Positions 21,440 through 43,723 of a DNA stretch of 64,000 bases are shown piece after piece (position 1 is the stretch's first letter; each line of letters opens with the position of its first letter). The notes beneath the pieces are model-generated. The model searched no databases. It worked only from the letters and a program-made list of their open reading frames with translations, and was not told where the DNA came from. The stretch spans positions 124,001 to 188,000 of the IMG/VR virus record IMGVR_UViG_3300023184_000027; one strand, 5' to 3'. The translations under genes and the position numbers were made by a program.

Positions 21440-24400
21440 TTATATATTCTCAAAAGAAGCTCCGGTTGGAGTAATATAGAATGTGATATCTATAAATTCT
21501 AATGATTTGGTTGGTTTGATATAAATCTTACCAGTCATTTGATTTCTGTCTAAATCAGCAGCATCTGATGATACTGTTACACGGAAATCATATAAACCTC
21601 TATCTCTTCTGATAGCATCCAAAATAGGGTTAACAGCGTCCAAGAAGTCTTGTCTTACTTTAGCGTCGTTTTGTTCAAACAATAATCTTACAGATACCGC
21701 AGAAATCAATTTACGAGCTTGAAGTAATAATCTTCTAACATTGATTCTATCTAAAGCCGATTGTCTTACTTGAAGAGTTTTATTACCCCAAATTACAGTA
21801 CCAACATCAGAGAAAGTAGCAATTGGGTTAATACGACCTTGATAAAGTGTATCTCTATCTTCTTGGGTTAGTTTACGTCTCGCTTTAACCGCATTTACAA
21901 TACCTCTTGTGTAACCCGCCGCAGCGAACCAAGGGAAAGCAATGTTATCAGTTAATGCTAAATTTCTCGTAACCTCAGCCGTTGCCGGTAAGTAGATTTG
22001 AGTATTGTTAACACTATCTCTTGTTAATACCCAAGGGTAGTAAGTTGCCGTGTAATTAGAATCTACACCTATTTGGTCTAAATTATCCACAGCTTCTTGA
22101 GGGTAGATTAAATCTAATTGGTCTCCGGTAGAAGGTACAAACATATTGTAATCAGGAGTTGTTGTAATATACAACGAATCCGCTCTATCATTCTCAATCA
22201 TATCAATAGCACTTTCAACTAAATCTGAATTGTTAAGATAATCAATACCCGGTGTTACAAAAACATTGATGTTAACCGCCTCAGGATTAGAAAATGTCAT
22301 TTGTCCTAATTTATATGCGTAATAATCAGTGTTACCATAATCTTGAGTATTGTCCCCAACTGTAATTTGTTTAAATGCTCCCCAACCTGTTGCTGTAGGA
22401 TATTTAATCGAAGGACAAGAACCGTGTAAGTAACCATTTCTACCTAATACAAACGTATCACCATTTGTTCTGTGTTCTCTGTAGATATCCCACCCGTCAA
22501 AACCTCCTTGAACAAGGAGACTGAATTTACGAGAATATAGTCTATAGTAAGGACTTGATTCGTTATCAGGGTCTTTAGTGAATGTTGCATCTCCAACATA
22601 GAATGCTGGTGTACCACTTGTTGCAAAAGCATTAGGAATTAAGATACTATTAGCGTCTTTATCCATGTGGAAACCTTTAGTTCTTGTTGACCAATCATCA
22701 CCTGTGATATCATTACAAACATCTAACGGAAGTTGTTTACCTTTATAACCAAAGAAATCAGCATCAATACCAATACTATCAGATATACCAAGATAAGTTC
22801 TTCTTACATTGTCACCACCACTTCTAGTTGCGTCATCCGCTCCTGAACCTAATCCAAATGGGGGGTTATAAACAACCTCACCAGGATAATCGTATTTAGT
22901 TTTCATAATCGGGAATGGTGATTTAACACCTGCGTAATCTCTAGAATTAAACCCTAAAAATCCACAAGGAAGAGCGTCCATTGGGGCATCTTCGTTAATC
23001 TCAATCATAACATATTTTGAATTTAATTCGTACTCACCATCCATAGTACCAATTTTCTTAGCAATGAATGAATTGTCGTTTATATTCATATTACAATTTG
23101 TAAATTTCTCAAGAACAACAGGTGCACTATCTGAATCATAAAAATCTCTAACTAACACATCAAAAGTTCCATTGTTAAATGAAATATTTGCGATAGATAT
23201 TTTAACCTCTGTGTTAGCAGCTTCACCATCAGCGATTGTTGTAAATTTAAATAAGTTGTAAACTTTATTACCTCTTAATTCAGATACAACCCAAGGAGAT
23301 GTTGGTGATTGATATTTTTCTAAGTACCAAGCGATTGATGTTGGGTCATTTTGTTGTCTAGCATTAGGTAATGCTGTTAATTGACAATTTAAACCTCTAA
23401 TATACCCTTTTCTATATCCGTATGTTAATAATGTTTGATATCTCTCTTCTACATACAATGGAACTGTTGTTCTTGGTTTTGCAAAATTGGACGAACCAAA
23501 TACTTTACTAATATATTTAGAATCAGAATTTTGGAATGAGGTTTCAAAGAAATATGACTCACCATCTTTATTAGTAACATTTAAACCAAAAGTAGAATAT
23601 GGGTTTTTAGTAATTCCTGAATAAACTGAAGTACAATCTATGGAAACATCTGTTAAACCAGATACTTCATAAACAGCTCCGTCATCACTACCGTAAGTAG
23701 CTAATCCTCTTGAACGAAGTGTTGCAATAACTAAATCGTCAAAATCAGTATAAGCCATTCCTGAATAAACATAAATTTCACCTACAACTGAACCTGAATA
23801 ACAAGATTTAGTTGTACCTGTGTTAGGTGTTCCAGTATTACCAGCAATATTAACATTACAAGGTACTACAGTTTCAACACAAACAGTCCAAGTAGTTGTA
23901 ACACTTTCATCTTCTGAAAGTAAATTATAAGATAAACATCCACTTGAAAAATCGTTAGCCGTATGTCCACTAATTTGATTTGTCAAAATTGACACATTTC
24001 CTGCACAAGTATTGAACCCACAAACAATTTTTGATAAGTCTACACCTACCGGAACGACAACGTCTATTCTATTTGTGTTATAATTAATACTACCAATTGT
24101 TGTAGCACTTAAACTTGATATAACAATTTTTGCATCACTATGAATTCCTTGTATTATAGTGATTGTGTCACCAACTTGATACCCCGTCCCTGGTGAATTA
24201 ATCGTTACTCCGGTAATCACATTACTAACATTAACTGCAACATTAACCGTTAAACCAGTTCCGTAAGTACTACCTGATGTTGTACCACTTCCTGCGGAAT
24301 ATCCTGTTCCACCTGATAATGAACCAGTGTTAAAACCTGAAACATATCCGCCAACACTAAATCCAAAGAAAGTAGCACAAGTTGATGAGGTAAATGTTGG

Positions 24401-25240
24401 AACAATAGTGTCTATAACACCATAAAAAGACGAACCCGTATATGAACCACCACCAATATTGTCAAACAATGAATAATACCAAGGGTCGTTTTGTGGTGCT
24501 GTGTAATCAGCTAAATCTGAACTAACATTTTCAACACCAAAAACATTTGTTGATGCTGTATATGATGTTAATCCTGAATAACTACTTGTTGGTATTGTAC
24601 CAAAATATGAAATACCTGAATACGAATCGCCATAATTGGTAATTGAGTTAAATATTAAATTATTAATATCTGAACGAAGAGTTGAGATGCTACCGTTAAA
24701 TAATTCATAAGGTAAATCTATTCTATCTGTTATGAAATCTTGTAAATTATCTCCAGTATCAGTTATAGATGATAAACTATCATTACAACCTGAAAAGTCA
24801 TAATGATACACATATGTTTCATAACTATCACAACCATCAACACAATCAACTATTGTTGGAACATCACAATAAAAATCTATTGTGGTTGGGTCTACATTTG
24901 CTTTTGTTGTGATTGACCAAGATGGTCCCGCATCATATCCGGAAAGACCTAAAACTCTAGTTACAAATAATTGATTAGATTGTTGTAAATATGCTTTAGC
25001 GATATAGGACGCCTCATACTTTGGTATTTGTGTGTTTATAAATTTTTCAGGGGAAGTTCCTCCAAAATACGCCGAGAATTCATCAAAATTTCGTATAAAA
25101 ATAGGTTCGAAGGCTGGACCTTTTAAGGTTTCACCAACAATACCTAATGTAGTTACACCCACACTTTGGGCTACGAAACTTAAATCAACTTCAGAAGTAT
25201 ATACTCCAGGAGATACGAATACTTTACTGTTTGATGCCAT
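21440..25240 (-). CDS. Contractile tail sheath protein (gp18-like) with large inserted domains
   Basis: N-terminal FVSPGVYTSEVDLS...GPAFEP; C-terminal YYPW...PWFAAAGYTRG...INPI...WGNKTLQ...LDRINVRRLL...FEQND...IKPTKSLEFIDITF. Confidence 0.96.
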   Translation of the reverse strand: MASNSKVFVSPGVYTSEVDLSFVAQSVGVTTLGIVGETLKGPAFEPIFIRNFDEFSAYFGGTSPEKFINTQIPKYEASYIAKAYLQQSNQLFVTRVLGLSGYDAGPSWSITTKANVDPTTIDFYCDVPTIVDCVDGCDSYETYVYHYDFSGCNDSLSSITDTGDNLQDFITDRIDLPYELFNGSISTLRSDINNLIFNSITNYGDSYSGISYFGTIPTSSYSGLTSYTASTNVFGVENVSSDLADYTAPQNDPWYYSLFDNIGGGSYTGSSFYGVIDTIVPTFTSSTCATFFGFSVGGYVSGFNTGSLSGGTGYSAGSGTTSGSTYGTGLTVNVAVNVSNVITGVTINSPGTGYQVGDTITIIQGIHSDAKIVISSLSATTIGSINYNTNRIDVVVPVGVDLSKIVCGFNTCAGNVSILTNQISGHTANDFSSGCLSYNLLSEDESVTTTWTVCVETVVPCNVNIAGNTGTPNTGTTKSCYSGSVVGEIYVYSGMAYTDFDDLVIATLRSRGLATYGSDDGAVYEVSGLTDVSIDCTSVYSGITKNPYSTFGLNVTNKDGESYFFETSFQNSDSKYISKVFGSSNFAKPRTTVPLYVEERYQTLLTYGYRKGYIRGLNCQLTALPNARQQNDPTSIAWYLEKYQSPTSPWVVSELRGNKVYNLFKFTTIADGEAANTEVKISIANISFNNGTFDVLVRDFYDSDSAPVVLEKFTNCNMNINDNSFIAKKIGTMDGEYELNSKYVMIEINEDAPMDALPCGFLGFNSRDYAGVKSPFPIMKTKYDYPGEVVYNPPFGLGSGADDATRSGGDNVRRTYLGISDSIGIDADFFGYKGKQLPLDVCNDITGDDWSTRTKGFHMDKDANSILIPNAFATSGTPAFYVGDATFTKDPDNESSPYYRLYSRKFSLLVQGGFDGWDIYREHRTNGDTFVLGRNGYLHGSCPSIKYPTATGWGAFKQITVGDNTQDYGNTDYYAYKLGQMTFSNPEAVNINVFVTPGIDYLNNSDLVESAIDMIENDRADSLYITTTPDYNMFVPSTGDQLDLIYPQEAVDNLDQIGVDSNYTATYYPWVLTRDSVNNTQIYLPATAEVTRNLALTDNIAFPWFAAAGYTRGIVNAVKARRKLTQEDRDTLYQGRINPIATFSDVGTVIWGNKTLQVRQSALDRINVRRLLLQARKLISAVSVRLLFEQNDAKVRQDFLDAVNPILDAIRRDRGLYDFRVTVSSDAADLDRNQMTGKIYIKPTKSLEFIDITFYITPTGASFENI

Positions 25241-25365: not shown

Positions 25366-25530
25366 ATGGATAAAGACATTAAAAAGATTAAAAATTTGAA
25401 GATTTCTGTGGAAACCCACGAAATTCTTAAAACTTATTGTGAAAAAAAGGGTATTAAAATGTACCGGTTTTTGGAAAGATTAATTGTTGAGAAATGCTCA
25501 CCTAAAAAGGATATCTATGGTGAGGACTAA
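25366..25530 (+). CDS. Small ribbon-helix-helix-like DNA-binding protein (54 aa)
   Basis: MDKDIKKIKNLKISVETHEILKTYCEKKGIKMYRFLERLI fits the RHH pattern (alternating beta-strand, helix, G turn, helix). ATG 25366 is preferred over the track start at 25231. Confidence 0.7.
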   Translation: MDKDIKKIKNLKISVETHEILKTYCEKKGIKMYRFLERLIVEKCSPKKDIYGED

Positions 25531-26564
25531 ATTAAGTGGTTTTCTAATGTAATTGACCCCTCTTTAGTGTTGTCTTTTTTGACCACAACAATTTTTAAAA
25601 CATCATTTGTATTGATTTGTATTTGAGGTAAATCAGACCCATAATATTCATTATTAATGAACACATCAAACGACTCAATGTTAATTGATTTACCCAAATT
25701 TAAGTCTGCTGTATAATCAAAAATTTGTGAAATAATATTATTATTTTCAGTAAATAAAACATTTAAAGTTGTGCTACTTGGATTTGAATTTAATTTTTTT
25801 TGTTTTTTTGTTGTGTTTTTATCAAGTTCCACGACCTGTAATAATCTAGAAATTGCAGGAGAAACTTCAAATTCATTTTCATCAATTAAAAAACCAAGTA
25901 AGGTAAATTCATAACTTTGAATGTAGTATTTTCTTTTTTCAAGTTCCATAACAGATTCGTCCGATATGTTTCCCATAACGATTGGAATGTAATGTCCTTT
26001 GATTGATGTATAGGCTTGTTTTGACGCAAACTTCTCAAGTACATTTTTATTAAACTCGTTTAATTCCCTCATTCTATTACAAATTATTTTTACAACAAAT
26101 GAAATATCAACAGGAACTGGTTGAGGTATTTTATATACATCCGACCCGTGTCTTTGTCCGTCCCAAGTTGGTACTTGAGCGTAAAAGAATTGTTTTCTGT
26201 TTGGTATGTTATAAACTATTGCAGGATTTGTACCATATTTAACTTCGGGTACTCTAACCACGGTTATAAATGGGGTCTCAACATTTTTATCTATATTTTG
26301 TAAATTCCAAGTTTCTGTGAATTGTGACCAATTTTGTGTTGTTACCAAAATATCAACCATTGATATAGTTTTACCCTCAACAACGGTTTTTAAATCATTT
26401 TTAACAAAATCTAAAAACCCCCTATCCAAATCCGCATGTAAAATTGATTTTGGTAGGAAAGTTCCGTCTTTATTAATTTTATCCAAAAGTTCTTCTCTTC
26501 TTGGTAGAAGAGTTTTTGAGGATGTTAACGGAATATGTTTTTTTATTTTGTTTGGTAATGGCAT
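25527..26564 (-). CDS. Tail terminator / sheath stabiliser-like protein (gp15-like)
   Basis: P.ITV.R...IPQPVPVDISFVVKI...MRELNEF pattern; adjacent to the sheath and neck genes. Confidence 0.6.
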   Translation of the reverse strand: MPLPNKIKKHIPLTSSKTLLPRREELLDKINKDGTFLPKSILHADLDRGFLDFVKNDLKTVVEGKTISMVDILVTTQNWSQFTETWNLQNIDKNVETPFITVVRVPEVKYGTNPAIVYNIPNRKQFFYAQVPTWDGQRHGSDVYKIPQPVPVDISFVVKIICNRMRELNEFNKNVLEKFASKQAYTSIKGHYIPIVMGNISDESVMELEKRKYYIQSYEFTLLGFLIDENEFEVSPAISRLLQVVELDKNTTKKQKKLNSNPSSTTLNVLFTENNNIISQIFDYTADLNLGKSINIESFDVFINNEYYGSDLPQIQINTNDVLKIVVVKKDNTKEGSITLENHLI

Positions 26565-26566
26565 CT

Positions 26567-27001
26567 TTATTTTGTTATAAAAATTTTATTTTTTAAATTA
26601 ATCATTTCCACTTCATTGGCGTGAAATATAGGTTCTTCGGTGTCTTTCATAACATAAGAATTATACTTGTATGGGTTGTAGGTGACAATATTATTGTTAG
26701 GTTCTTCTGGTAAATTCTCACAAGGGAATATACAATAGTCCATTAAAGTTCCGATAACAAATGAATGTACGTTTTTTCTTTTTTCTTTTAAAACTTTTTC
26801 TCTACCACCGGGTCTAACTCTAAACTCAACATCTTTTAATTTAACATAATCGGCATGAAATATAACTAAACTTTTGTATATAATAGAAAATGTTTGTTTA
26901 TGTAGGTTATAATAAAGCATAACTTTTTTACCGATATAATCGTTATCTGAATAATTTTCAAATAATCTTTTTGATTGAGATTCTGTTATTAATATTTTCA
27001 T
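26567..27001 (-). CDS. Hypothetical phage protein with MKILITE leader
   Basis: MKILITESQ leader followed by YYNLHK...GREKVLKEKRKNVHSFV...VTYNPYK. Confidence 0.8.
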   Translation of the reverse strand: MKILITESQSKRLFENYSDNDYIGKKVMLYYNLHKQTFSIIYKSLVIFHADYVKLKDVEFRVRPGGREKVLKEKRKNVHSFVIGTLMDYCIFPCENLPEEPNNNIVTYNPYKYNSYVMKDTEEPIFHANEVEMINLKNKIFITK

Positions 27002-27405
27002 TATTCGTAATATGCTGATACCGATTTAACCGGTAAATTAAATTTATCTTCAACCCATTTTTTCATAGGTTCTCTCCAACTACTTCCAAACATATTGTCT
27101 AAATGTTCACCATATTCACCCCATACCTCTACAATTGGTGCCCTGTCTTTATGTGGTTTACTTGATGGTTCATCACTATAGTAATCAACATTAAGATAAT
27201 TAAATACAATATCAGAATAATCTTCACCAGCCCAAGTACCACCTTTATAAAAATGTAAAAGGTTTTCATCTTCAGGATTTTCCTGCCAATCGTCACCGTC
27301 GTAATTTGAACCATAGACCCAATCAATTTCATTTGAGTCTAAATAACCATCAATATACTTATATATTGAATCAAATAATTTACTTTCTGTTATTAATATT
27401 TTCAT
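27001..27405 (-). CDS. Acidic hypothetical protein with MKILITE leader (paralog of 27405..27794)
   Basis: Shares the leader and C-terminus (NMFG..W.EPMK.W..D.F.LPVK) with the neighbouring gene. Confidence 0.8.
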   Translation of the reverse strand: MKILITESKLFDSIYKYIDGYLDSNEIDWVYGSNYDGDDWQENPEDENLLHFYKGGTWAGEDYSDIVFNYLNVDYYSDEPSSKPHKDRAPIVEVWGEYGEHLDNMFGSSWREPMKKWVEDKFNLPVKSVSAYYE

Positions 27406-27794
27406 TAGTCGGCTACGATTGTTTTTACTGGTAAATCAAAGTTATCTTTAAACCACTCTTTCATAGGTTCTACCCAATAATTTCCAAACATATTGGTTAA
27501 TTTTTCATAATCAGTAACAATTAATATTGGTGTCTTTTCTCTAAAAGATTTATTTGAATGTTTATCACTATAATATTCCTTTTGAATATATGCAAAAGCA
27601 ACACCATCTTGGTCGTAATCACCTTCATATATATGATAAAAATACTCTCGTATATATGGGTTTTCCTCATCATCATATTCATCATCATTCCATGTGGTTG
27701 GATGAAAATAATCTATGTTACTTACATCAAAAGTATCTTCAAGATAATTATATATTGTTCTATATAATTTATTTTCTGTTATTAATATTTTCAT
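27405..27794 (-). CDS. Acidic hypothetical protein with MKILITE leader (paralog of 27001..27405)
   Basis: Same shared leader and C-terminus; translationally coupled through TAATG. Confidence 0.8.
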   Translation of the reverse strand: MKILITENKLYRTIYNYLEDTFDVSNIDYFHPTTWNDDEYDDEENPYIREYFYHIYEGDYDQDGVAFAYIQKEYYSDKHSNKSFREKTPILIVTDYEKLTNMFGNYWVEPMKEWFKDNFDLPVKTIVAD

Positions 27795-28306
27795 TATAGA
27801 CCTCTAAATTCATTATTCATTACCGGTGAAGCAATAATACTACGATAAAAAGGTTTATACCCCCCGATTGTGTGTTTATTATCTGAAGTCACCCTTCCAT
27901 CATTATTTACCGTATAGTATCTTACTTTATCCTCCGTTTCGTAGTATCCGATATAATCACCATAATTAATATCCACATCTAATTCTTCCAAATCTCTTTG
28001 ATAAACAGAAAGTTTCATATTACCCGGCTCCATTTGGTCTAATTTTGATGTCCCCAAATATTTGTTCTCGGGAGCCAAAATTTGGACATAACCTTTGAGT
28101 TCAACGGGAGGGTGAAACTTAATACTATCAACTGACGCCTCTCCGTAAATGTCGTCTGTCTTGGTTTTGTATCTATCAATACGATATAGAACCACGGTAA
28201 AATTCATGTCTCCGTGTAACCATTCTTGACCGAATGAAACCTCTAAATTAAAATCTTCGGCTCCAAAGAACTTTCCAATTCTTGTGATGGGCACTTTATT
28301 ATTCAT
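27794..28306 (-). CDS. Head-closure / neck protein (gp14-like)
   Basis: VVLYRID...DDIYGEA...PVEL...INYGDYI...YYTV fits a head-closure beta-barrel; neck gene neighbourhood. Confidence 0.55.
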   Translation of the reverse strand: MNNKVPITRIGKFFGAEDFNLEVSFGQEWLHGDMNFTVVLYRIDRYKTKTDDIYGEASVDSIKFHPPVELKGYVQILAPENKYLGTSKLDQMEPGNMKLSVYQRDLEELDVDINYGDYIGYYETEDKVRYYTVNNDGRVTSDNKHTIGGYKPFYRSIIASPVMNNEFRGL

Positions 28307-28628
28307 ATTGTTTTCGTCTTTTGTATTCGGATTCCGAACGAGTACCTGAATTATTAATTATAACATTAACACCAAAATAATTTTTTATGGTCTTTTGTAT
28401 TTCATTATTCCACCCACTTCTGTAATTTACGGGAATTGCTCGAGTATTTGGATTAACTTTCAGATATTTACTATCGTCAGGAACAACATATGTTACCCTC
28501 ATATAATATTCGTCACCAGTATCATCAGTAGGTTCTAATGTATAAATAAGTTCAGACACACCATTAGGTTTAATGTGTTTTATCGTTTTATTTATTAATT
28601 TGTCTAATATCTCTTGTCTCATTCTCAT
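28299..28628 (-). CDS. Hypothetical protein
   Basis: 109-aa ORF, first in its operon, with a TATTTAT motif upstream. Confidence 0.7.
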   Translation of the reverse strand: MRMRQEILDKLINKTIKHIKPNGVSELIYTLEPTDDTGDEYYMRVTYVVPDDSKYLKVNPNTRAIPVNYRSGWNNEIQKTIKNYFGVNVIINNSGTRSESEYKRRKQYE

Positions 28629-28678: not shown

Positions 28679-30454
28679 TTGGAAAACAATACATCTGAAA
28701 ATTCTAATTTAACAGTAGAACAACGAGCAATATCCCTTCTTGAAACTTATCAGGGAGCGAATAACTATATCCTAAAATTAAAATTACAAAAGGAAACTAA
28801 TAAGAGATTCTTCCCTACTCGGGCACAATCTGACTACATAATAAATTATCACGAAGTAATACCAAAGGTGGCTAAAAGATGGGTTGATTTAGACCCCTAC
28901 TTCGCCAAAAAAATTGCTGATGAAAAACTATTAACAAATATTCCCGAACAAGTATGGGTGGAAAAGTTATTAGTTGAGAAAGAAAAATCGTATCATATTT
29001 GGGGTAAAGTTTTATCCGGTGAAACTATTAACGAATTTTGGTTACCGAAGGGTGCCTTAATTAAAACTCACACAATTAAAGATGTTGTGGTTGATTATGA
29101 AAAATATTCTAATAGACCACCACTTGAACATCAAAAACTTGCAATTGAGAAACTTGCCGGGTCTAAAAGATTTATTTTAGCCGACGATATGGGACTTGGT
29201 AAGACAACTTCCACCATTATCGCCGCATTAGAAACGGGAGCGAAGAAAATATTAATTGTTTGTCCGGCATCCCTAAAGATTAACTGGCAAAGAGAGATTG
29301 AGAATTATACCGATAGAAGTGTTTATATTTCTGAAGGTAAGAATTTCTCAATAGAACACGATTTTGTGATTGTAAATTACGATATTCTTAAAAACTTTTA
29401 CGACCTTAAAGGTAAGACAGAATCTTTAATCACTCAAGGAAATTTTGATTTAATTATTTTGGACGAAGCTCATTATGTGAGTAATGGACAAGCTGCGAGA
29501 ACCAAACTTGTTAATAGTTTTTCTAAAAATTGTGAAAGAGTGTGGTTGTTAACGGGGACACCTATGACAAATCGTCCGATGAATTACTTTAACCTATTAT
29601 CTCTTATTGAGAGTCCGGTTTCCCAAAATTGGATGGCTTACGCAATACGATATTGTCAAGGTTATCAATTTATGGCGGGAAAAAGAAAAATATGGAATGT
29701 TTCGGGAGCATCAAATTTAGAAGAATTAAGAGACAGAACATCAAGACAAGTATTGAGAAGATTAAAAACTGAAGTTTTAGATTTACCTGAAAAAATTATT
29801 ACCCCAATTTATTTAAGATTAAAATCAAAACTTTATGAAGGGTTGATGGGAGAATACTATGATTGGTATAATAAAAACCCCGATGAATCAACATCACTTA
29901 CCGTTCAGTTCAGTAAGTTAATGAAAGTTCGTCAAGTGATTGCTGAAGAAAAAGTTAAAGACACAATAGAATTAGCTGAAAATATTTTGGAACAAGATAA
30001 AAAAGTTATTATTTTTACCAATTTTACGGACACATTAAATCAGATTGCCGAACATTTTGGAAAAATTGCGGTTAAATTAGATGGTTCAACATCAAAACCT
30101 CAACGACAATACGCTGTTGACCAATTTCAAGATAATGAAAAGATTAAAGTGTTTGTTGGTAATGTGAAGGCAGCCGGAGTTGGTATAACTTTAACCGCCG
30201 CTGAAGCTGTAATCATCAATGACTTATCTTTTGTTCCTGGTGACTTAGCACAAGCTGAAGATAGAGCATATAGATATGGACAAAAAAATTCGGTATCAGT
30301 TTATTACCCAATATTCGATAATAGTATAGAAGGAATCATTTATGATATGGTGAATCATAAGAAACAAAATATTAATACCGTAATGGGTGATAATATAGAA
30401 GAGAAGGGTGATTTCATCGGAGAACTTATGAATAAAATTAACAACCGAGGTTAA
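28679..30454 (+). CDS. SNF2/SMARCAL1-like (SF2) helicase/translocase
   Basis: LADDMGLGKT, IVCPASLKINW, LDEAH, LTGTP, AAGVGITLT, QAEDRAYRYGQ. Confidence 0.93.
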   Translation: MENNTSENSNLTVEQRAISLLETYQGANNYILKLKLQKETNKRFFPTRAQSDYIINYHEVIPKVAKRWVDLDPYFAKKIADEKLLTNIPEQVWVEKLLVEKEKSYHIWGKVLSGETINEFWLPKGALIKTHTIKDVVVDYEKYSNRPPLEHQKLAIEKLAGSKRFILADDMGLGKTTSTIIAALETGAKKILIVCPASLKINWQREIENYTDRSVYISEGKNFSIEHDFVIVNYDILKNFYDLKGKTESLITQGNFDLIILDEAHYVSNGQAARTKLVNSFSKNCERVWLLTGTPMTNRPMNYFNLLSLIESPVSQNWMAYAIRYCQGYQFMAGKRKIWNVSGASNLEELRDRTSRQVLRRLKTEVLDLPEKIITPIYLRLKSKLYEGLMGEYYDWYNKNPDESTSLTVQFSKLMKVRQVIAEEKVKDTIELAENILEQDKKVIIFTNFTDTLNQIAEHFGKIAVKLDGSTSKPQRQYAVDQFQDNEKIKVFVGNVKAAGVGITLTAAEAVIINDLSFVPGDLAQAEDRAYRYGQKNSVSVYYPIFDNSIEGIIYDMVNHKKQNINTVMGDNIEEKGDFIGELMNKINNRG

Positions 30455-30495: not shown

Positions 30496-32034
30496 ATGAA
30501 AAAGATTGAAGAAAAAATCAATCTCATAACAGAAGAACTAAAAAAAGTTGAAACCCTCGAAAATCAACAAATGTTCATTAATGAGATGAAAAAAATAGGG
30601 ATAGAGAAATTACCCTACGCCTATTCAGCACTAAAACAATTTATTGATGCTGAAACAATGAATTACCATTATAATAAACACTATAAAGGATATGTTGATA
30701 AATTAAATTCAGCCCTTAAAAAGAAAGATTATGGTGATTTAGAATTAGAAGAAATTATTAAATCAATAAGTAGATTTGATAAGACAATTAGGAACAATGC
30801 CGGAGGAGCTTTTAACCACGCATTGTTTTGGAAAATGTTAACCCCAAAAAAACAAACACCAAATGGTGAAATTATTAGGCAAATTAAAAAAGATTTTACT
30901 ACCTTTGTCAAGTTTAAAAATAAGTTTGAGGAAATTGCTCAAGAAAAATTTGGTTCAGGTTGGGTTTGGTTAGTTTTAACAAAACGAAATACCTTAAAAA
31001 TTGTAACCACAGAAAATCAAGACAACCCTCTTATGAATGTTATAGACGACGGAGGTTATCCAATATTAGGATTAGATTTATGGGAACACGCATATTATTT
31101 AAAATATAGAAATAAAAAAAATGACTATATTAAGAATTTTTGGAAATGTGTTAATTGGGAATTTGTTAATAAACTATATACAATGAGAATTGAGACTAAA
31201 CTAAATGAATCATTAAATTTTAAATCTGTAATTTCTGAAGGTAAATCAGAAAGATGTAGTAGAGAAGAAAACGAGGCCATTCGTATGGTTTTTAATATCA
31301 ACCCGAAAATTAAACAAATTTTTATGGAAGGTATTAATCACATCCTTAAAGAAGTTTTTCCGGATAACTATTATGGATATGGTGAATACGCTAAAGGTGA
31401 AATGTCGGGAGTGTATGATTTAGAAAGAGATGGTCGTTCTGTCTTAAATAAATTAAACACAAACTATAGTTGTTTCTGTGTTCTTCTTAATGATACAAAT
31501 CAAGTTTTAAGTTCTAAAAATTTACCAAACATTAAATTAATTGGTTTAAAACCATTGGAACAAATTGAAGAAACTAAAAAATTACTTATTTTCTTACACG
31601 AATATAAATTTAGAATATTCACACAAACTTCAGCAACATTTCAAAACATTATGAAAGTTTTAACCCAAACAGATACTTGGGGACAAGCTCGTGAAGACAA
31701 AACTGTTGAGATTTTAAAGAAAAAATTTGGAAAAGATAATGTTAACGCCATCGGTAAATTAGGTAGTAAAGCTGATATGATTGGTGGTATAGATTGTGAA
31801 GTTATTATTAATGGTAGAAAATTAAGTAGTCAAATTAAACCATTTGGAAGTATTGAAACTACCGGTGAAGAAATTACCGTTATTGGTTCAGGTGCCGTTA
31901 AAAAATACTATACAGATTGGTTAATTTTCACTAGAAATAATAAAGATGTTTTAATTTTCAGAAATAAAAATTCAAAAATTGTTAATGGACAATATGTTTT
32001 TCCTAAAGGAGATTTAATTTATTCATTAAATTGA
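30496..32034 (+). CDS. sodA: Fe/Mn superoxide dismutase (Mn-type signature) fused to a C-terminal PD-(D/E)XK-like domain
   Basis: LPYAYSAL...HYNKH...NNAGGAFNHALFW...FGSGWVWL...NQDNP...DLWEHAYY with all four metal ligands; an extra ~270 aa contain E...GIDC...QIKP. Confidence 0.9.
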   Translation: MKKIEEKINLITEELKKVETLENQQMFINEMKKIGIEKLPYAYSALKQFIDAETMNYHYNKHYKGYVDKLNSALKKKDYGDLELEEIIKSISRFDKTIRNNAGGAFNHALFWKMLTPKKQTPNGEIIRQIKKDFTTFVKFKNKFEEIAQEKFGSGWVWLVLTKRNTLKIVTTENQDNPLMNVIDDGGYPILGLDLWEHAYYLKYRNKKNDYIKNFWKCVNWEFVNKLYTMRIETKLNESLNFKSVISEGKSERCSREENEAIRMVFNINPKIKQIFMEGINHILKEVFPDNYYGYGEYAKGEMSGVYDLERDGRSVLNKLNTNYSCFCVLLNDTNQVLSSKNLPNIKLIGLKPLEQIEETKKLLIFLHEYKFRIFTQTSATFQNIMKVLTQTDTWGQAREDKTVEILKKKFGKDNVNAIGKLGSKADMIGGIDCEVIINGRKLSSQIKPFGSIETTGEEITVIGSGAVKKYYTDWLIFTRNNKDVLIFRNKNSKIVNGQYVFPKGDLIYSLN

Positions 32035-39400: not shown

Positions 39401-42400
39401 TGGAGATAATCCTGGTGTTGGTGTTAGTGTTGGTGTTGGAGTTGGATTTAAACCTTTTGTTGGTGTTGGTGTTTGTGTTGGTGTTTTAGTTGGTGTTGGT
39501 GTTTGTGTTGGTGTTTTAGTTGGCGTTTTAGTTGGCGTTGGAGTTTTAGTGTTTGTAGGTGTTGGTGTTGGTGTAACTGATATAGCATCGCCGGTTATTA
39601 TCCAACCAAAAGTATTTATAAGCACACCTCGTGGATTGTCCTCTATTATGGTATATGTTAATCCGACAGCACCTAACGGAACATTATATTTTTTTATTGG
39701 TAACACCGACCATTTTAATAATAAATTATCATAATTTGTTAAGCTCATAGTACTTCCGTTAAACATGTTCTCCATGTTAACGACTGATTTAATATCCCAA
39801 TTTGATATATCTTGATTAAATAGTGTTGAATAGAACATACCTCCCATATGAGTCACATTACTAACATTCCAATTACCAATTGGTTGGTCAAATTGACAAT
39901 CGTAGAACATACCACGCATTGTAGTTACCCCACTAACATTCCAATTTTCAAGACTTTCATTATATTTTGAATTACGAAACATATAACTCATGTTAACAAC
40001 ACTATTGACATTCCAATCACCTATTGGTTGATTAAACGATGAGACGTAAAACATATAAGACATATCTTTAACGTTACTAACATTCCAGGAGTTAAGAGAT
40101 TGATTAAATAATGATGTGTTAAACATATGTGACATATTGGTAACACCGCTAACATTCCAACTAGAGATATCTTGATTAAATTTTGAAGACGCGAACATAT
40201 ATATCATATTACGAACATTACCAACGTTCCAATTTGAAATATTTTCATCAAAAATTGTTGCGTTAAACATATAACTCATATTAATAACTTTTGATGTGTC
40301 CCAATTATTTAAATCTTGATTAAATGGTGTTGAATAAAACATGTATGTCATATTGGTAACATTACTAACATTCCAATTACCTATTGGTTGATTAAACGAT
40401 GCGTTATAAAACATAAATGACATATCGGTAACATGACTAACAACCCAATTTGATATATCTTCATTAAATATTGACCCTCTAAACATCCCTAACATAGTCG
40501 TAACACTACTAACATCCCAATTTGATATACCCTGATTAAACACAGACTCTCTAAACATACTTGTCATAGTCGTAACACTACTGACAACCCAATTACCGAT
40601 TGGTTGATTAAATGATGAAGAGTAAAACATAGATGACATATCTTTAACATTATTAACATTCCAATCACCGATTGGTTGGTTAAATCTTGATAAAGTAAAC
40701 ATATTTGACATATCAATAACGTTACTAACATCCCACATAGAAATATCTTGGTCAAATAACGATGAAGTAAACATACTTCTCATATCTGTTACATTACTAA
40801 CATCCCAAGTCGATATGTCTTGGTTAAATAATGAATCATAAAACATGGTTGCCATATTGGTAACACTACTAACGACCCAATTACCGATTGGTTGATTAAA
40901 TATTGATTTATAAAACATGTTTGACATATCGGTAACATTACTAACATCCCAATTTGATATATCTTGATTAAACGATGTGTTATAAAACATTCCTGTCATA
41001 TTTGTTATATTACTAACATCCCACAATTCTATATTATTAATTAAGGTTAAATTGGTACAATTAAAGAATAACCGGTATAAACTAGTTGTGCCTGTTAATG
41101 TTAATGCGTCGTTAACATTGTCTAAAACTAAATTAGTACACCCATAAAAACAAGAAGTACTATTCCCTAAATTTAAACAACCCCAATTAACTATTGATAA
41201 GAGCTTAGTTTTGTCAATATTATTCCCAAAAGACCACTTTACTACCACACCAGTTATTGTAATTGTATAATCACCACCATCAGCATAAATGTGTTTTCTG
41301 TTTGCATAACTATTCACAGAAGTCGTTCCATCCCCCCAATCTATCGTACCACTATATGTTCCTCCGACTACATAAGGTAATGTAACACTATTAAATGACG
41401 ATTTTAACCTCCATGTTGATATAAAATCTAGATTATGTGATATTACTATTGGGGTGGGTGTAGGTGTTGGTGTTAGAGTTTCTGTTGGTGTATTAGTTGG
41501 GGTTGAAGTGTTAGTTGGGGTTAAAGTCAAGGATAATCCTGATGTTGGTGTAGGTGTAGGTGATAATCCTGGCGTTGGAGTTGGAGTTGATGTCTCTGTA
41601 GGAGTTGGAGTGGGTGTCTCTGTAGGAGTGACTTCAGGAGTGACTAATGTATAGTCAATATATACAACCTCACCAAAAGTGAAATTGGTGTTTGTTTGAT
41701 TTACTAATGTAATCCCCGCTTCCGAAACAGTGTCTATAAAATAACCACTTTCGTCGCTAAGTATCTGAACTGAATCTGACCCACCACTAAACACCGCAAC
41801 AGATTCATTCTGACCAATTGTAAGTAAAAAATTATTACCAACCATATTACCAAAATAATCGGTTTGATTAACACCATTATTATCAATGTTATTAAAATAT
41901 ATTCCACCATTCTCTGATATATTATTAGGGTTATTATCTGCAATATGTAAACTATAATTAGCCAATAATGTTTCACCTGATAATGGAATATCAATATTAC
42001 TTATTAAAGAATACGGAATACCATCATTTATTGATGATATATCGAGAGAATTAATTAATAATATGGATTCGGAAAATTTATACTGTGTGTTCTCAATAAA
42101 ATAACCATCAATTGTTATATCACCTACAATACAATCGATGGATGTTATTGGTAAATTTATAACTCCAGGTCCATAAACAAACCAACCAACCTTTATATCA
42201 CATAAATTAGTGTTAGAAAATTTACCTATGTTTCCTGTTGGGTTTTGATTGGTATATGGCCCTAAAAATGATTGAGTTGGGGTTGCAGTTGGAGTTGGAG
42301 TTGGAGTATTCGTAGGTGTTTGGGTTGGTGTTTGGTCCGGTGTTTGGTTTGGAGTTACTCGTATTCTTTCATATTTTATATCTGAAGGTGGCCAACTAAT

Positions 42401-42619: not shown

Positions 42620-43723
42620 TTATGTTGGTATCTCAACGGCAAAACAAATTTCACCATGTTCTCTTATTAATCTTTCCATATCAGCAAATGAAATATAGGA
42701 GTGTCCTGATTGACCCCAAGATTTTCCCCAACTATTTTTAATTCTGAAAAGTCTCGTCACCGTATTAACACCATTAATAACATAAGCGTGTCCTCCAGCA
42801 ATACGACCACTAATTCTAATTAAACCATTTCTATCTGGATAAAACATCCCATTATACCAATTAGTTCCAACAACAACAGGACCTAAATTTAAAACAGAAT
42901 TTATTAAACTTGTTAAATCAAAACCCCAATAATAGGAAGAAACTTTACGAACACTTTGTAAATATTTAACACCACCTCTAACTGATGTACCATCATAATT
43001 CTCACCAACCCATTCGTCAACTCTTTGAGCGTTTTCATAAATAACCCTAGGCGGTATTATCGGAGCAACCCCACTTTGAGGAACCGGACCATCTTCTAAC
43101 CAATGAGCCCAAGCATATCCAACACATTGGGGTGTATTACCTTGGTTACCCCACCATCCATTATCATCCCAGTATCTATTGGTAATTCTAACAGGTACGG
43201 CACTTAAAAGATTATTTATAGAATATTTATGGTCTCTTTCATCAGGTATATATTGTCTACCTAATTGATATGTTTTATTAATACTTTCTATAAGAACAAT
43301 TGGTTCGTTAACACAACAAGGAAATTCTGAAACATAACAACTATCATACACCAAATCATCGGCAATGAATGATTCCTGAACATTAATATTAAGTTTTTCT
43401 CTAATTGGTAAGATAAGTACACCATCAGAATTTCTTAACATAAACTCACCTTCATACCTACCAACACGATTGGTGTCTTTGGATGTGAATTGGTAATATA
43501 TGTAATATTCTGGTTCGGCATTGGGGTCTATTGAGGTTTTCTCAACAAATCCACCCGGTCTTGAAGTAATTTTTGGTATTCCCGTTTCTACATCTACCAT
43601 TGAAAAGAAAATTGACGATAACTCTATGGTTTTCATAAAATTATTGTAATCACTTCTTCCATCTTTTACGACTTGGAATTTTAAAACAGGTAAAGTCGAG
43701 TTTTTCTTAATAAAAAAATCCAT
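42620..43723 (-). CDS. BppU-like N-terminal domain fused to a papain-family (C1) cysteine peptidase
   Basis: N-terminal F.IKKNSTLPVLKF...YYQFT..DT...GRYEGEF...LP; C-terminal NQGNTPQCVGYA, GGHAY, IKNSWGKSWG with catalytic Q/C/H/N intact. Confidence 0.8.
   Translation of the reverse strand: MDFFIKKNSTLPVLKFQVVKDGRSDYNNFMKTIELSSIFFSMVDVETGIPKITSRPGGFVEKTSIDPNAEPEYYIYYQFTSKDTNRVGRYEGEFMLRNSDGVLILPIREKLNINVQESFIADDLVYDSCYVSEFPCCVNEPIVLIESINKTYQLGRQYIPDERDHKYSINNLLSAVPVRITNRYWDDNGWWGNQGNTPQCVGYAWAHWLEDGPVPQSGVAPIIPPRVIYENAQRVDEWVGENYDGTSVRGGVKYLQSVRKVSSYYWGFDLTSLINSVLNLGPVVVGTNWYNGMFYPDRNGLIRISGRIAGGHAYVINGVNTVTRLFRIKNSWGKSWGQSGHSYISFADMERLIREHGEICFAVEIPT

What the first reader, a model, noticed from the sequence alone, without database searches (positions are those of the whole stretch)
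26567..27796. Tandem gene cassettes joined by an identical 23-nt junction encoding the leader MKILITE
Seen: three consecutive genes begin with exactly TAATGAAAATATTAATAACAGAA (previous stop overlapping ATG), identical even at synonymous positions. Two of the downstream bodies are diverged paralogs and one is unrelated. The array sits between two core neck/tail genes. Inference: the sequence does two jobs. As a peptide it is a sorting tag; as DNA it is a microhomology that lets cargo genes be gained, lost or shuffled while staying translationally coupled, like a minimal cassette array.
Basis: partly seen in the sequence, partly recalled or inferred. Interest (0 to 1): 0.7.

Follow-up and report, generated by a model that had tools for sequence, protein, structure and literature searches.

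The report
Leader-tagged cassette array in jumbo phage
Three neighbouring small genes in the tail-gene operon of an uncultured lake phage all start with the same short tag, which in related phages sits in front of dozens of unrelated proteins at variable sites; it most likely directs them into the phage head for injection, as phage T4 does with its internal proteins, but this is inferred and untested.

Summary
The 23-mer occurs exactly three times on the minus strand. Each copy is the stop-overlapping start of one of three consecutive genes: g1 (129 aa), g2 (134 aa, 40% identical to g1) and g3 (144 aa, L5-gp82-family body).

It is the local form of a 15-residue N-terminal leader, consensus MKIIITEsQyklLxE. 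About 15-19 genes per genome carry it, as do more than 60 unrelated cargo families in related uncultured freshwater jumbo phages.

In 62 relatives the slot between the two conserved flanking genes holds 0-3 cassettes. Every cassette but one carries a recognisable form of the leader. Close relatives differ by whole cassettes, with junctions in the leader.

Complete relatives have a T4-type head module (portal, S77 protease, Gp23 capsid). The leader carries two (I/L)xE protease-type motifs, and conservation stops after the second. T4 internal proteins are built the same way, and ipII and ipIII share an identical 30-nt leader.

Best reading: the leader is a capsid-targeting tag, removable by the protease, on injected accessory proteins. 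Its coding DNA also supplies homology for cassette gain and loss. Packaging, cleavage and recombination are inferred, not shown. The nucleotide identity exceeds codon bias only modestly.

The parts
28299..28628 (-). f109, first gene of the minus-strand operon, overlapping f170 by 8 nt
   Evidence: ORF list. Conserved upstream of f170 in relatives, e.g. L010. No family match.
27794..28306 (-). f170, conserved upstream flank of the cassette slot; function unknown
   Evidence: Found upstream of f345 in every relative with enough sequence, at 60-98% identity. No Pfam, PHROG or PDB match.
27774..27796 (-). 23-mer copy 1: TAA stop of f170 overlapping the ATG of g1, plus the first 7 codons (MKILITE)
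27405..27794 (-). g1, cassette 1 (129 aa; acidic, net charge -14): leader plus a lineage-specific alpha/beta body
   Evidence: 29 homologs, all unnamed. AlphaFold model pLDDT 85 with helix 3-21; the first 10 residues have pLDDT 64. No PDB fold match.
27385..27407 (-). 23-mer copy 2: stop of g1 overlapping the start of g2
27001..27405 (-). g2, cassette 2 (134 aa; acidic, net charge -16), paralog of g1. Absent from close relatives L019 and L077.
26981..27003 (-). 23-mer copy 3: stop of g2 overlapping the start of g3
26567..27001 (-). g3, cassette 3 (144 aa; basic): 15-aa leader ending L-F-E, a short linker, then a Phage_L5_gp82 domain (residues 24-135)
   Evidence: Pfam E 8e-29 and PHROG 586. 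Homologs in isolated Bacillus and Mycobacterium phages align only from residue 24, so they lack the leader. AlphaFold places the leader as a low-confidence detached helix 7-18, with residues 15-19 below pLDDT 50.
25527..26564 (-). f345, conserved downstream flank of the slot; function unknown
   Evidence: 62 relatives at 57-97% identity. No family or PDB match.
21440..25240 (-). Tail sheath gene (1266 aa) next downstream: context showing the slot lies in the tail module
   Evidence: PHROG 23 at E 4e-54; Pfam Phage_sheath_1 and Phage_sheath_1C. Tube and baseplate hub follow.

Best explanation
The three genes fill a hypervariable cassette slot inside the tail-gene operon of an uncultured freshwater jumbo phage with a T4-type head. 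Each cassette is a cargo gene fused to a 15-residue N-terminal leader (consensus MKIIITEsQyklLxE).

Inferred peptide role: the leader works like the capsid-targeting sequence of T4 internal proteins and Alt. It brings the cargo into the prohead core. The gp21-type (S77) prohead protease then cuts it off after Glu7 (I-T-E) and, where present, after Glu15 (L-x-E). The mature cargo is injected with the DNA and acts as ready-made host-takeover or anti-defence protein.

Inferred DNA role: the leader-coding 21-48 nt, together with the overlapping stop, form direct repeats at every cassette boundary. Homologous recombination or slippage between leaders can therefore delete, duplicate or import a cassette while keeping the frame and the stop-start coupling.

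Shown: the repeat, the modular leader, the variable slot, the T4-type head genes in relatives, and the T4 precedent. Inferred: packaging, cleavage, injection and the recombination mechanism.
For: 1. The leader is modular. 15 of 212 ORFs in this genome and 19 of 385 in the complete relative G001 match the same strict leader pattern. At least 17 unrelated cargo clusters were found in the first set of loci and 61 in a wider IMG/VR scan. Conservation stops at residue 15-16. One cargo has a Thr/Pro/Ser/Gly linker directly after the leader.

2. The leader carries two (I/V/L)-x-E motifs, at positions 5-7 and 13-15, each with a variable middle residue.

3. Relatives G001 and G004 encode a Peptidase_S77 protease. 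In G001 it lies in a head module with a T4-type portal, an acidic scaffold-like protein and a Gp23 capsid protein. Four further near-complete (96-100%) leader-bearing genomes also have S77. The capsid protein aligns ASFLINE|A with T4's GSFLTE|A maturation site.

4. T4 precedent. ipII and ipIII start with an identical 30-nt leader (MKTYQEFIAE) in front of different bodies, and ipI has ITE at residues 17-19. Alt is processed at ITE-6, and T4 internal proteins reach the core through 10-20-residue leaders that gp21 removes (PMC5694885). T-even internal-protein loci are highly variable, with more than 30 variants (PMC2839356).

5. The slot is plastic. The gap between f170 and f345 is 3-8 nt in many relatives and 159-1800 nt in others, and every cassette there but one carries a recognisable form of the leader. 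The exception is the 200-aa gene of L052-L055, which has no hydrophobic run or Glu7 at its start (MRYKINKIQYNLITEE). Close relatives carry [g1][g2][g3], [X101][g1][g3] or [g1'][g1][g3], with g1 and g3 97% identical between two of these haplotypes. A tree of f345 implies repeated gain and loss.

6. There is local homogenisation. g1' and g1 in G001 share their first 16 codons exactly, at 76-77% overall nt identity (P about 0.002). In L071, two unrelated cargos share an identical 21-mer that encodes MRIIITE (P about 0.009).

7. X101 has a 45.5%-identical paralog in a six-cassette leader array 150 kb away in G001.

8. The gp82 body occurs without the leader in isolated phages. In three of the listed records (phiNIT1, Mater) the match lies in the annotated terminal repeat. 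From my own knowledge of SPO1-like phages, not from a tool here, that region holds early host-takeover genes.
Against: - There are no proteomic, cleavage or packaging data. The lineage is uncultured: neither flank, g1 nor the commonest cargo has a match in isolated phages.
- The two nearest isolated phages by capsid protein lack the leader.
- The window's own 71%-complete record contains no S77 or Gp23 gene. That evidence comes from relatives.
- The leader has no sequence similarity to the T4 leader beyond MK and the terminal (I/L)xE.
- Residues 8-21 of g1 are modelled as a confident helix packed on the body, so at least part of the conserved start is structural.
- Most leader genes lie in regions of small accessory ORFs, not beside head genes.
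- The codon identity of the three copies is only modestly above the genome's strong codon bias. Leaders in G001's six-gene array are not identical.
- Contig-level read data showed no leader-to-leader joints.
- The first cassette to enter an empty slot cannot have come in by leader-leader recombination, because the flanking genes have no leader.
Confidence: 0.5

Rival explanations
1. The leader is a shared N-terminal interaction or assembly module (a short strand plus an amphipathic helix). It docks the cargos on some common partner other than the prohead core, for example a tail or neck component, a chaperone or a host protein, or it makes them oligomerise. It is not cleaved.
For: The slot sits in the tail operon, not the head operon. 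In g1 the helix that starts in the leader is part of a confident fold. Many leader genes lie among small accessory ORFs. The (I/L)xE pattern could simply reflect amphipathic periodicity.
Against: Conservation ends abruptly at residue 15. A flexible linker or low-confidence stretch follows in some cargos. Both conserved Glu residues have a hydrophobic residue at P3 and a variable P2, as protease sites do. No partner is identifiable.
Confidence: 0.25
2. There is no special DNA role. The identical 23-mers are the by-product of strong purifying selection on the peptide, extreme AT-rich codon bias and recent tandem duplication of g1-type genes. The slot varies through ordinary illegitimate recombination filtered by selection for intact genes.
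For: 70% of codons are identical at conserved residues elsewhere in g1/g2, giving P about 0.12 per pair for the leader. Distant leader pairs share 65.5% of codons against 76% for adjacent pairs. Leaders in other arrays differ at synonymous sites. No leader-to-leader joints appear in the contigs. Tight stop-start overlaps are common genome-wide: 21 of 178 same-strand neighbours.
Against: g3's body is unrelated, so duplication cannot have supplied its leader. The 48-nt identity between g1' and g1 and the L071 pair are unlikely under the internal codon rate. Nearly all cassettes in the slot across lineages are leader-tagged, although only about 5% of genes are. New cassettes accumulate upstream of the resident gp82-type cassette, as insertion into its leader would predict.
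Confidence: 0.3
3. The conserved start is an mRNA-level element: an A/T-rich, unstructured initiation and re-initiation region for translational coupling. The peptide is incidental.
For: The 23-mer is 83% A+T and contains the upstream stop. AAA as the second codon and ATA codons are over-used in leaders.
Against: Across lineages the amino acids are kept while the codons vary: ATT/ATA/ATC, ACA/ACT/ACC/ACG, GAA/GAG, CAA/CAG. Conservation extends to residue 15, well beyond an initiation region. Free-standing leader genes that are not coupled to an upstream gene keep the same peptide.
Confidence: 0.05

Closest known systems
T4 internal proteins IPI, IPII, IPIII and Alt, with their capsid-targeting sequence, in the hypervariable internal-protein loci of T-even phages
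   Same: A short N-terminal leader is shared by unrelated small proteins. The leader ends in (I/L)xE, the site type cut by the gp21-family prohead protease. Neighbouring genes have identical leader DNA (ipII and ipIII: 30 nt). The loci vary in number and identity of genes between close relatives (PMC2839356; PMC5694885). The phage has a T4-type portal, protease and capsid protein.
   Different: There is no sequence similarity to MKTYQEFIAE. The leader is 15 aa with two candidate sites. Cassettes are joined by overlapping stop and start, with no promoter or terminator of their own. The slot lies in the tail operon. The family is far larger (15-19 genes per genome, more than 60 cargo families) and is spread over several arrays. 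Packaging and cleavage are untested here.
PeSL (early promoter plus stem-loop) cassettes that mediate modular shuffling and mini-circle formation in the T4-type phages RB49 and phi1 (Arbiol et al. 2010, PMC2839356)
   Same: Short conserved repeats flank small accessory genes in variable regions. Recombination between them would delete or insert whole genes without an integrase. Close relatives differ by whole cassettes.
   Different: PeSLs are intergenic regulatory elements. Here the repeat is coding sequence plus the stop-start overlap, there is no intergenic DNA, and no promoter or terminator signal rises above chance. Circles were not looked for in raw reads.
SPN3US gp53 and gp54, paralogous head proteins with identical 15-residue N-termini (PMC5694885)
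   Same: Diverged paralogs (34% identity there, 40% here) keep an identical N-terminal stretch that contains protease-type x-E motifs in a jumbo phage.
   Different: In SPN3US the propeptides are over 100 residues long, only two paralogs are involved, and processing was shown by mass spectrometry.
Integron gene cassettes
   Same: A directional array of promoterless cassettes, with variation concentrated at one end.
   Different: No attC-like inverted repeats at the junctions. An integrase was not looked for. The repeat lies inside the coding sequence.

Membership tests
T4-type capsid-targeted internal proteins | Short N-terminal leader shared by otherwise unrelated proteins | tested here: met
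   A 15-aa leader sits on at least 17 and then 61 unrelated cargo clusters. Conservation ends at residue 15-16.
T4-type capsid-targeted internal proteins | Leader ends in a prohead-protease site (hydrophobic-x-Glu) | tested here: met
   I-[TNKS]-E at residues 5-7 in all strict-pattern leaders. [LIVMF]-x-E at 13-15 in 9 of 17 cluster representatives and 56 of 134 unique proteins. Only the motif was tested, not cleavage.
T4-type capsid-targeted internal proteins | Phage encodes a gp21-family (S77) protease and a T4-type prohead | tested here: inconclusive
   Not found in the window's own 71%-complete record. Found in the complete relative G001, in G004 and in four other near-complete (96-100%) leader-bearing genomes.
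T4-type capsid-targeted internal proteins | Sequence similarity of the leader to the T4 leader MKTYQEFIAE | tested here: not met
   Only Met-Lys and the terminal (I/L)xE are shared. Any relationship is by design, not demonstrable homology.
T4-type capsid-targeted internal proteins | Protein is present in the capsid, its leader is removed, and it is injected | not testable with these tools
   No cultured relative and no proteome. The protease-substrate complex prediction gave no answer.
T4-type capsid-targeted internal proteins | Genes lie in loci that vary in number and identity between close relatives | tested here: met
   0-3 cassettes in the same slot. Three haplotypes occur among relatives with 87-97% identical flanks.
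Pfam PF25735 Phage_L5_gp82 (body of g3) | Score above the curated cut-off over most of the model | tested here: met
   100.5 bits against a cut-off of 27; model positions 5-114 of 120, residues 24-135.
PeSL regulatory cassettes | Intergenic sigma-70-like promoter plus stem-loop terminator at cassette borders | tested here: not met
   Genes overlap by one base. Promoter-like sites: 22 found against 23.9 expected. No terminator at the junctions.
Integron cassettes | attC-type imperfect inverted repeat at each cassette end | tested here: not met
   No inverted repeats at the junctions.
Integron cassettes | Adjacent tyrosine-recombinase integrase | not tested
   No integrase search was run. The neighbours are tail genes and a helicase.

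The most novel reading that the evidence does not exclude
A widespread group of uncultured freshwater jumbo phages with T4-type heads uses one portable 15-residue propeptide to load dozens of unrelated effector proteins into the capsid. The DNA that encodes this propeptide is itself the recombination site of an integrase-free cassette system, which moves cargos between several arrays and between genomes while keeping them in frame and translationally coupled.
Probability: 0.3. Interest if true: 0.8.

Novelty: new variant of a known kind. Interest (0 to 1): 0.6.

Why it matters
If the leader is a capsid-targeting tag, it marks by sequence alone the whole set of proteins these phages inject ahead of gene expression. 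That is about 5% of their genes and more than 60 families, almost all of unknown function. It would be a ready catalogue of candidate host-takeover and anti-defence proteins from abundant lake phages.

It would also extend the T4 internal-protein principle, so far known mainly from T-even coliphages, to a deep-branching jumbo lineage.

Finally, it would give a second natural example in which the tag's coding sequence may double as the substrate for gene shuffling. A short, transferable packaging tag with defined protease sites would also be useful for loading foreign proteins into phage heads, as has been done with the T4 tag.

Tried and rejected
- Reads: only Logan contigs were available for the 24 runs that hold the region. 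Laying four of them gave no leader-to-leader joints, only noisy short joints from related strains. This is uninformative about rare variants.
- Complex prediction of the G001 S77 protease with the g3 ortholog returned 'no answer'. It is not used as evidence either way.
- Fold search of the g1 model found no PDB match. The only viral-library matches are unnamed paralogs in an uncultured phage.
- Atlas search with the leader alone found only unnamed short clusters.
- The flank genes gave no Pfam, PHROG or PDB match, even with profiles.
- The T4 late-promoter motif TATAAATA is not enriched in G001 (122 found, 124 expected) and does not mark the leader arrays, so expression timing could not be inferred.
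- The sigma-70 promoter and terminator scan and Rfam found nothing in the array.
- A literature search for the leader strings found no paper.
- I considered a secretion or lipoprotein signal and rejected it: the hydrophobic run is only 4-5 residues and is followed by Glu.
- An HK97-type (S78) protease was sought in relatives and not found.
Full report
**1. The observation**

The 23-mer TAATGAAAATATTAATAACAGAA occurs three times in the window, all on the minus strand, at 26981-27003, 27385-27407 and 27774-27796. No further copy appears even with three mismatches allowed, and shuffles gave none. It is found nowhere else in the 207,952-bp virus record that contains the window.

Each copy holds the TAA of one gene overlapping by one base the ATG of the next. 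This defines g1 (27794..27405, 129 aa), g2 (27405..27001, 134 aa) and g3 (27001..26567, 144 aa).
- g1 and g2 are 40% identical in protein and 66% in DNA.
- g3 shares only about 16 N-terminal residues with them.
- The rest of g3 is a Phage_L5_gp82 domain.

**2. Genomic setting**

The record is an IMG/VR contig from lake water, 31.6% G+C, estimated 71% complete. The three genes lie in a minus-strand operon with this order: f109, f170, g1, g2, g3, f345, then the tail sheath, an unassigned 273-aa ORF, the tube and the baseplate hub.
- The cassette genes overlap by one base.
- No promoter-like or terminator-like signal rises above chance inside the array, and no Rfam family matches.
- f170 and f345 gave no family or structure match. 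Their description as neck/tail genes rests on position and conservation only.

**3. The shared start is a genome-wide leader**

Seventeen of 212 non-overlapping ORFs in this genome begin with a loose form of MK-hydrophobic(3)-T/S/N/K-E. Fifteen match the stricter pattern, and two of the looser matches are false positives.

Aligning one representative of each unrelated body gives the consensus MKIIITEsQyklLxE. Information content falls to background after residue 15-16.
- One cargo continues straight into a Thr/Pro/Ser/Gly-rich linker.
- In the AlphaFold model of g3 the leader is a low-confidence helix joined to the beta-rich gp82 body by a stretch below pLDDT 50.
- In g1 the helix that starts in the leader runs on to residue 21 and packs on the body, but the first ten residues are less confident.
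- Homologs of the gp82 body in isolated Bacillus and Mycobacterium phages align only from residue 24, so the leader is an addition made in this lineage.

The complete 322-kb relative G001 has 19 leader genes among 385, including a run of six consecutive ones. The 80 loci analysed from it yielded 134 unique leader proteins in 61 cargo clusters. Only a few cargos have recognisable domains: phage lysozyme, DUF5872, a weak DHH match, and gp82.

**4. The slot is variable**

Sixty-two IMG/VR loci encode f345 at 57-97% identity. The distance between f170 and f345 is 3-8 nt in many of them, which means no cassette. In the others it is 159-172, 552, 614, 712, 846-854, 932, about 1018, 1131, 1215, 1227-1233, 1510 or 1800 nt.

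Every gene in the gap but one starts with a recognisable form of the leader. The bodies include:
- the g1/g2 family;
- gp82;
- a zinc ribbon alone, a zinc ribbon plus gp82, and a 501-aa extension of that;
- unrelated 95-, 98-, 101- and 200-aa proteins.

The exception is the 200-aa gene of L052-L055, whose start (MRYKINKIQYNLITEE) lacks the hydrophobic run and Glu7.

Among the closest relatives the haplotypes are:
- [g1][g2][g3] in the window, L023, L025 and L079;
- [X101][g1][g3] in L019 and three identical loci;
- [g1'][g1][g3] in G001.

g1 and g3 are about 97% identical in DNA between L025 and G001, even though the arrays differ. The alignments break exactly at the leaders.

The alleles of f170 and of the array are also reassorted. 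The window shares its f170 allele with L019 but its array with L023.

On a tree of f345, empty sites are both basal and nested within occupied clades, and sister lineages differ in content. This implies repeated gain, loss and replacement.

The gp82/zinc-ribbon family is usually the cassette next to f345, and most variation lies upstream of it. X101 has a 45.5%-identical paralog in the six-gene array of G001, 150 kb away. A four-cassette leader array lies at an unrelated locus in L012.

**5. How unusual is the nucleotide identity?**

With genome-wide codon usage as the null, three identical codings of KILITE have P = 4e-4. The other MKILITE gene in the genome uses three different codons. Codon choice here is very skewed, though.
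- At identical residues elsewhere in g1/g2, 70% of codons match, which gives P about 0.12 per pair for six codons.
- Leader genes far apart share 65.5% of such codons, against 76% for adjacent pairs.

Stronger local signals exist:
- g1' and g1 in G001 share their first 16 codons exactly, at 76-77% overall nt identity (P about 0.002).
- In L071 two unrelated cargos share an identical 21-mer encoding MRIIITE (P about 0.009).

Leaders in other arrays differ at synonymous sites. I conclude that local homogenisation or recent recombination is likely. The three-fold identity on its own is only modestly beyond codon bias plus peptide selection.

**6. What the peptide may do**

The own record lacks head genes. 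G001 and G004 encode a Peptidase_S77 (T4 gp21-type) protease. In G001 it lies in a module with a T4-type portal, an acidic scaffold-like protein and a Gp23 capsid protein. Four further near-complete (96-100%) leader-bearing genomes have S77 too. No HK97-type protease was found.

The capsid protein's N-terminal 60 residues contain five hydrophobic-x-Glu motifs. ASFLINE|A aligns with T4's GSFLTE|A maturation site.

Per the literature, T4-type and related jumbo-phage proteases cut after Glu in short motifs. T4 internal head proteins reach the core through 10-20-residue N-terminal leaders that are then removed, and Alt is processed at ITE-6 (PMC5694885).

In the T4 record itself, ipII and ipIII begin with the same 30 nt (MKTYQEFIAE) and 15 identical upstream bases in front of different bodies. 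ipI has ITE at residues 17-19.

The leader studied here has I-T-E at residues 5-7. In most non-g1 cargos it also has L/I-x-E at 13-15. In both motifs the middle residue varies while the hydrophobic residue and the Glu are kept, and conservation ends there.

The design therefore matches a T4-style capsid-targeting propeptide. This is an inference from motifs and homologous machinery, not a demonstration. A complex prediction gave no answer.

**7. What the DNA may do**

Because each cassette ends with a stop embedded in the next leader, a crossover anywhere within two leaders removes or adds an integral number of cassettes and keeps the stop-start coupling. The haplotypes in section 4 are what such events would produce.

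Insertion of an excised cassette into a resident leader would place new cassettes upstream of the resident one, as observed. The precedent is recombination between short repeated elements flanking accessory genes in T4-type phages, including mini-circles, and the shuffling proposed for the T-even internal-protein loci (PMC2839356).

The available read data were assembled contigs and showed no such joints. The mechanism remains inferred. The first cassette to enter an empty slot must have arrived some other way.

**8. Comparison and verdict**

The closest known system is the T-even internal-protein/Alt leader with its variable loci. Several defining features are met here:
- a modular leader;
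- a terminal protease-type motif;
- T4-type head machinery in the lineage;
- a variable locus.

Sequence similarity to the T4 leader is not met, and encapsidation and cleavage could not be tested. I therefore do not file the genes as members. I describe them as working like that system, in a new variant with these differences:
- a different, longer leader with two candidate cleavage sites;
- cassettes fused by stop-start overlap, without regulatory elements of their own;
- a slot inside the tail operon;
- a much larger and more dispersed family.

The lineage has no cultured member. Its nearest isolated relatives by capsid protein, a Microcystis phage and a Flavobacterium phage, lack the leader. 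No paper mentions the motif.

Noticed in passing
Outside the window, own genome G000:C1 17456-17812, 18716-19282, 20011-20784 (minus strand); also 25825-26430 and 40728-41666: Two further recurring N-terminal motifs sit on otherwise different small proteins: MNLQE-x-I-x-RI-x-E-MM (and MELNEQLTKIKTMM), and M[KR]DLIKKILREE. They are conserved in relative G001. They may be additional leader classes.
   Followed up: partly
window about 29200 (inside the ORF 28679-30454, plus strand): Relative L019 has about 1.1 kb of extra, ORF-poor DNA at the position matching window ~29200. This lies inside the SNF2-family helicase ORF, next to its GLGKT motif. There is no Rfam match, so it is not a recognisable intron.
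   Followed up: partly
window 21440-25240 (minus strand): The tail sheath protein is 1266 aa. Its strongest family matches cover only about residues 970-1264 (the best PHROG has a second, unlisted stretch), so most of the rest appears to be lineage-specific extra domains.
   Followed up: no
window 30496-32034 (plus strand): An Fe/Mn superoxide dismutase (both Pfam domains, residues 36-226) is fused to a roughly 285-residue C-terminal extension with no match.
   Followed up: no
L027:4494-5996, L029:5451-5996, L047:683-847, L049:2754-2909: The cassette next to f345 forms a modular series in relatives: leader + zinc ribbon; leader + zinc ribbon + gp82; leader + gp82; and a 501-aa form. In one clade the series shrinks to a 52-aa leader + zinc ribbon and then to an empty site.
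   Followed up: partly
L131:4235-5212 (minus strand): One relative has a 326-aa protein made of the leader followed by a phage lysozyme domain (Pfam E 2e-11). Under the capsid-targeting reading, a leader-tagged lysozyme would be a candidate entry-associated cell-wall hydrolase.
   Followed up: no
window 42620-43723 (minus strand): A 367-aa protein matches a papain-family cysteine peptidase (PHROG 16701 at E 3e-55; Pfam Peptidase_C1, weak). It lies next to a 2047-aa ORF and is unrelated to the S77 prohead protease discussed in this report.
   Followed up: no
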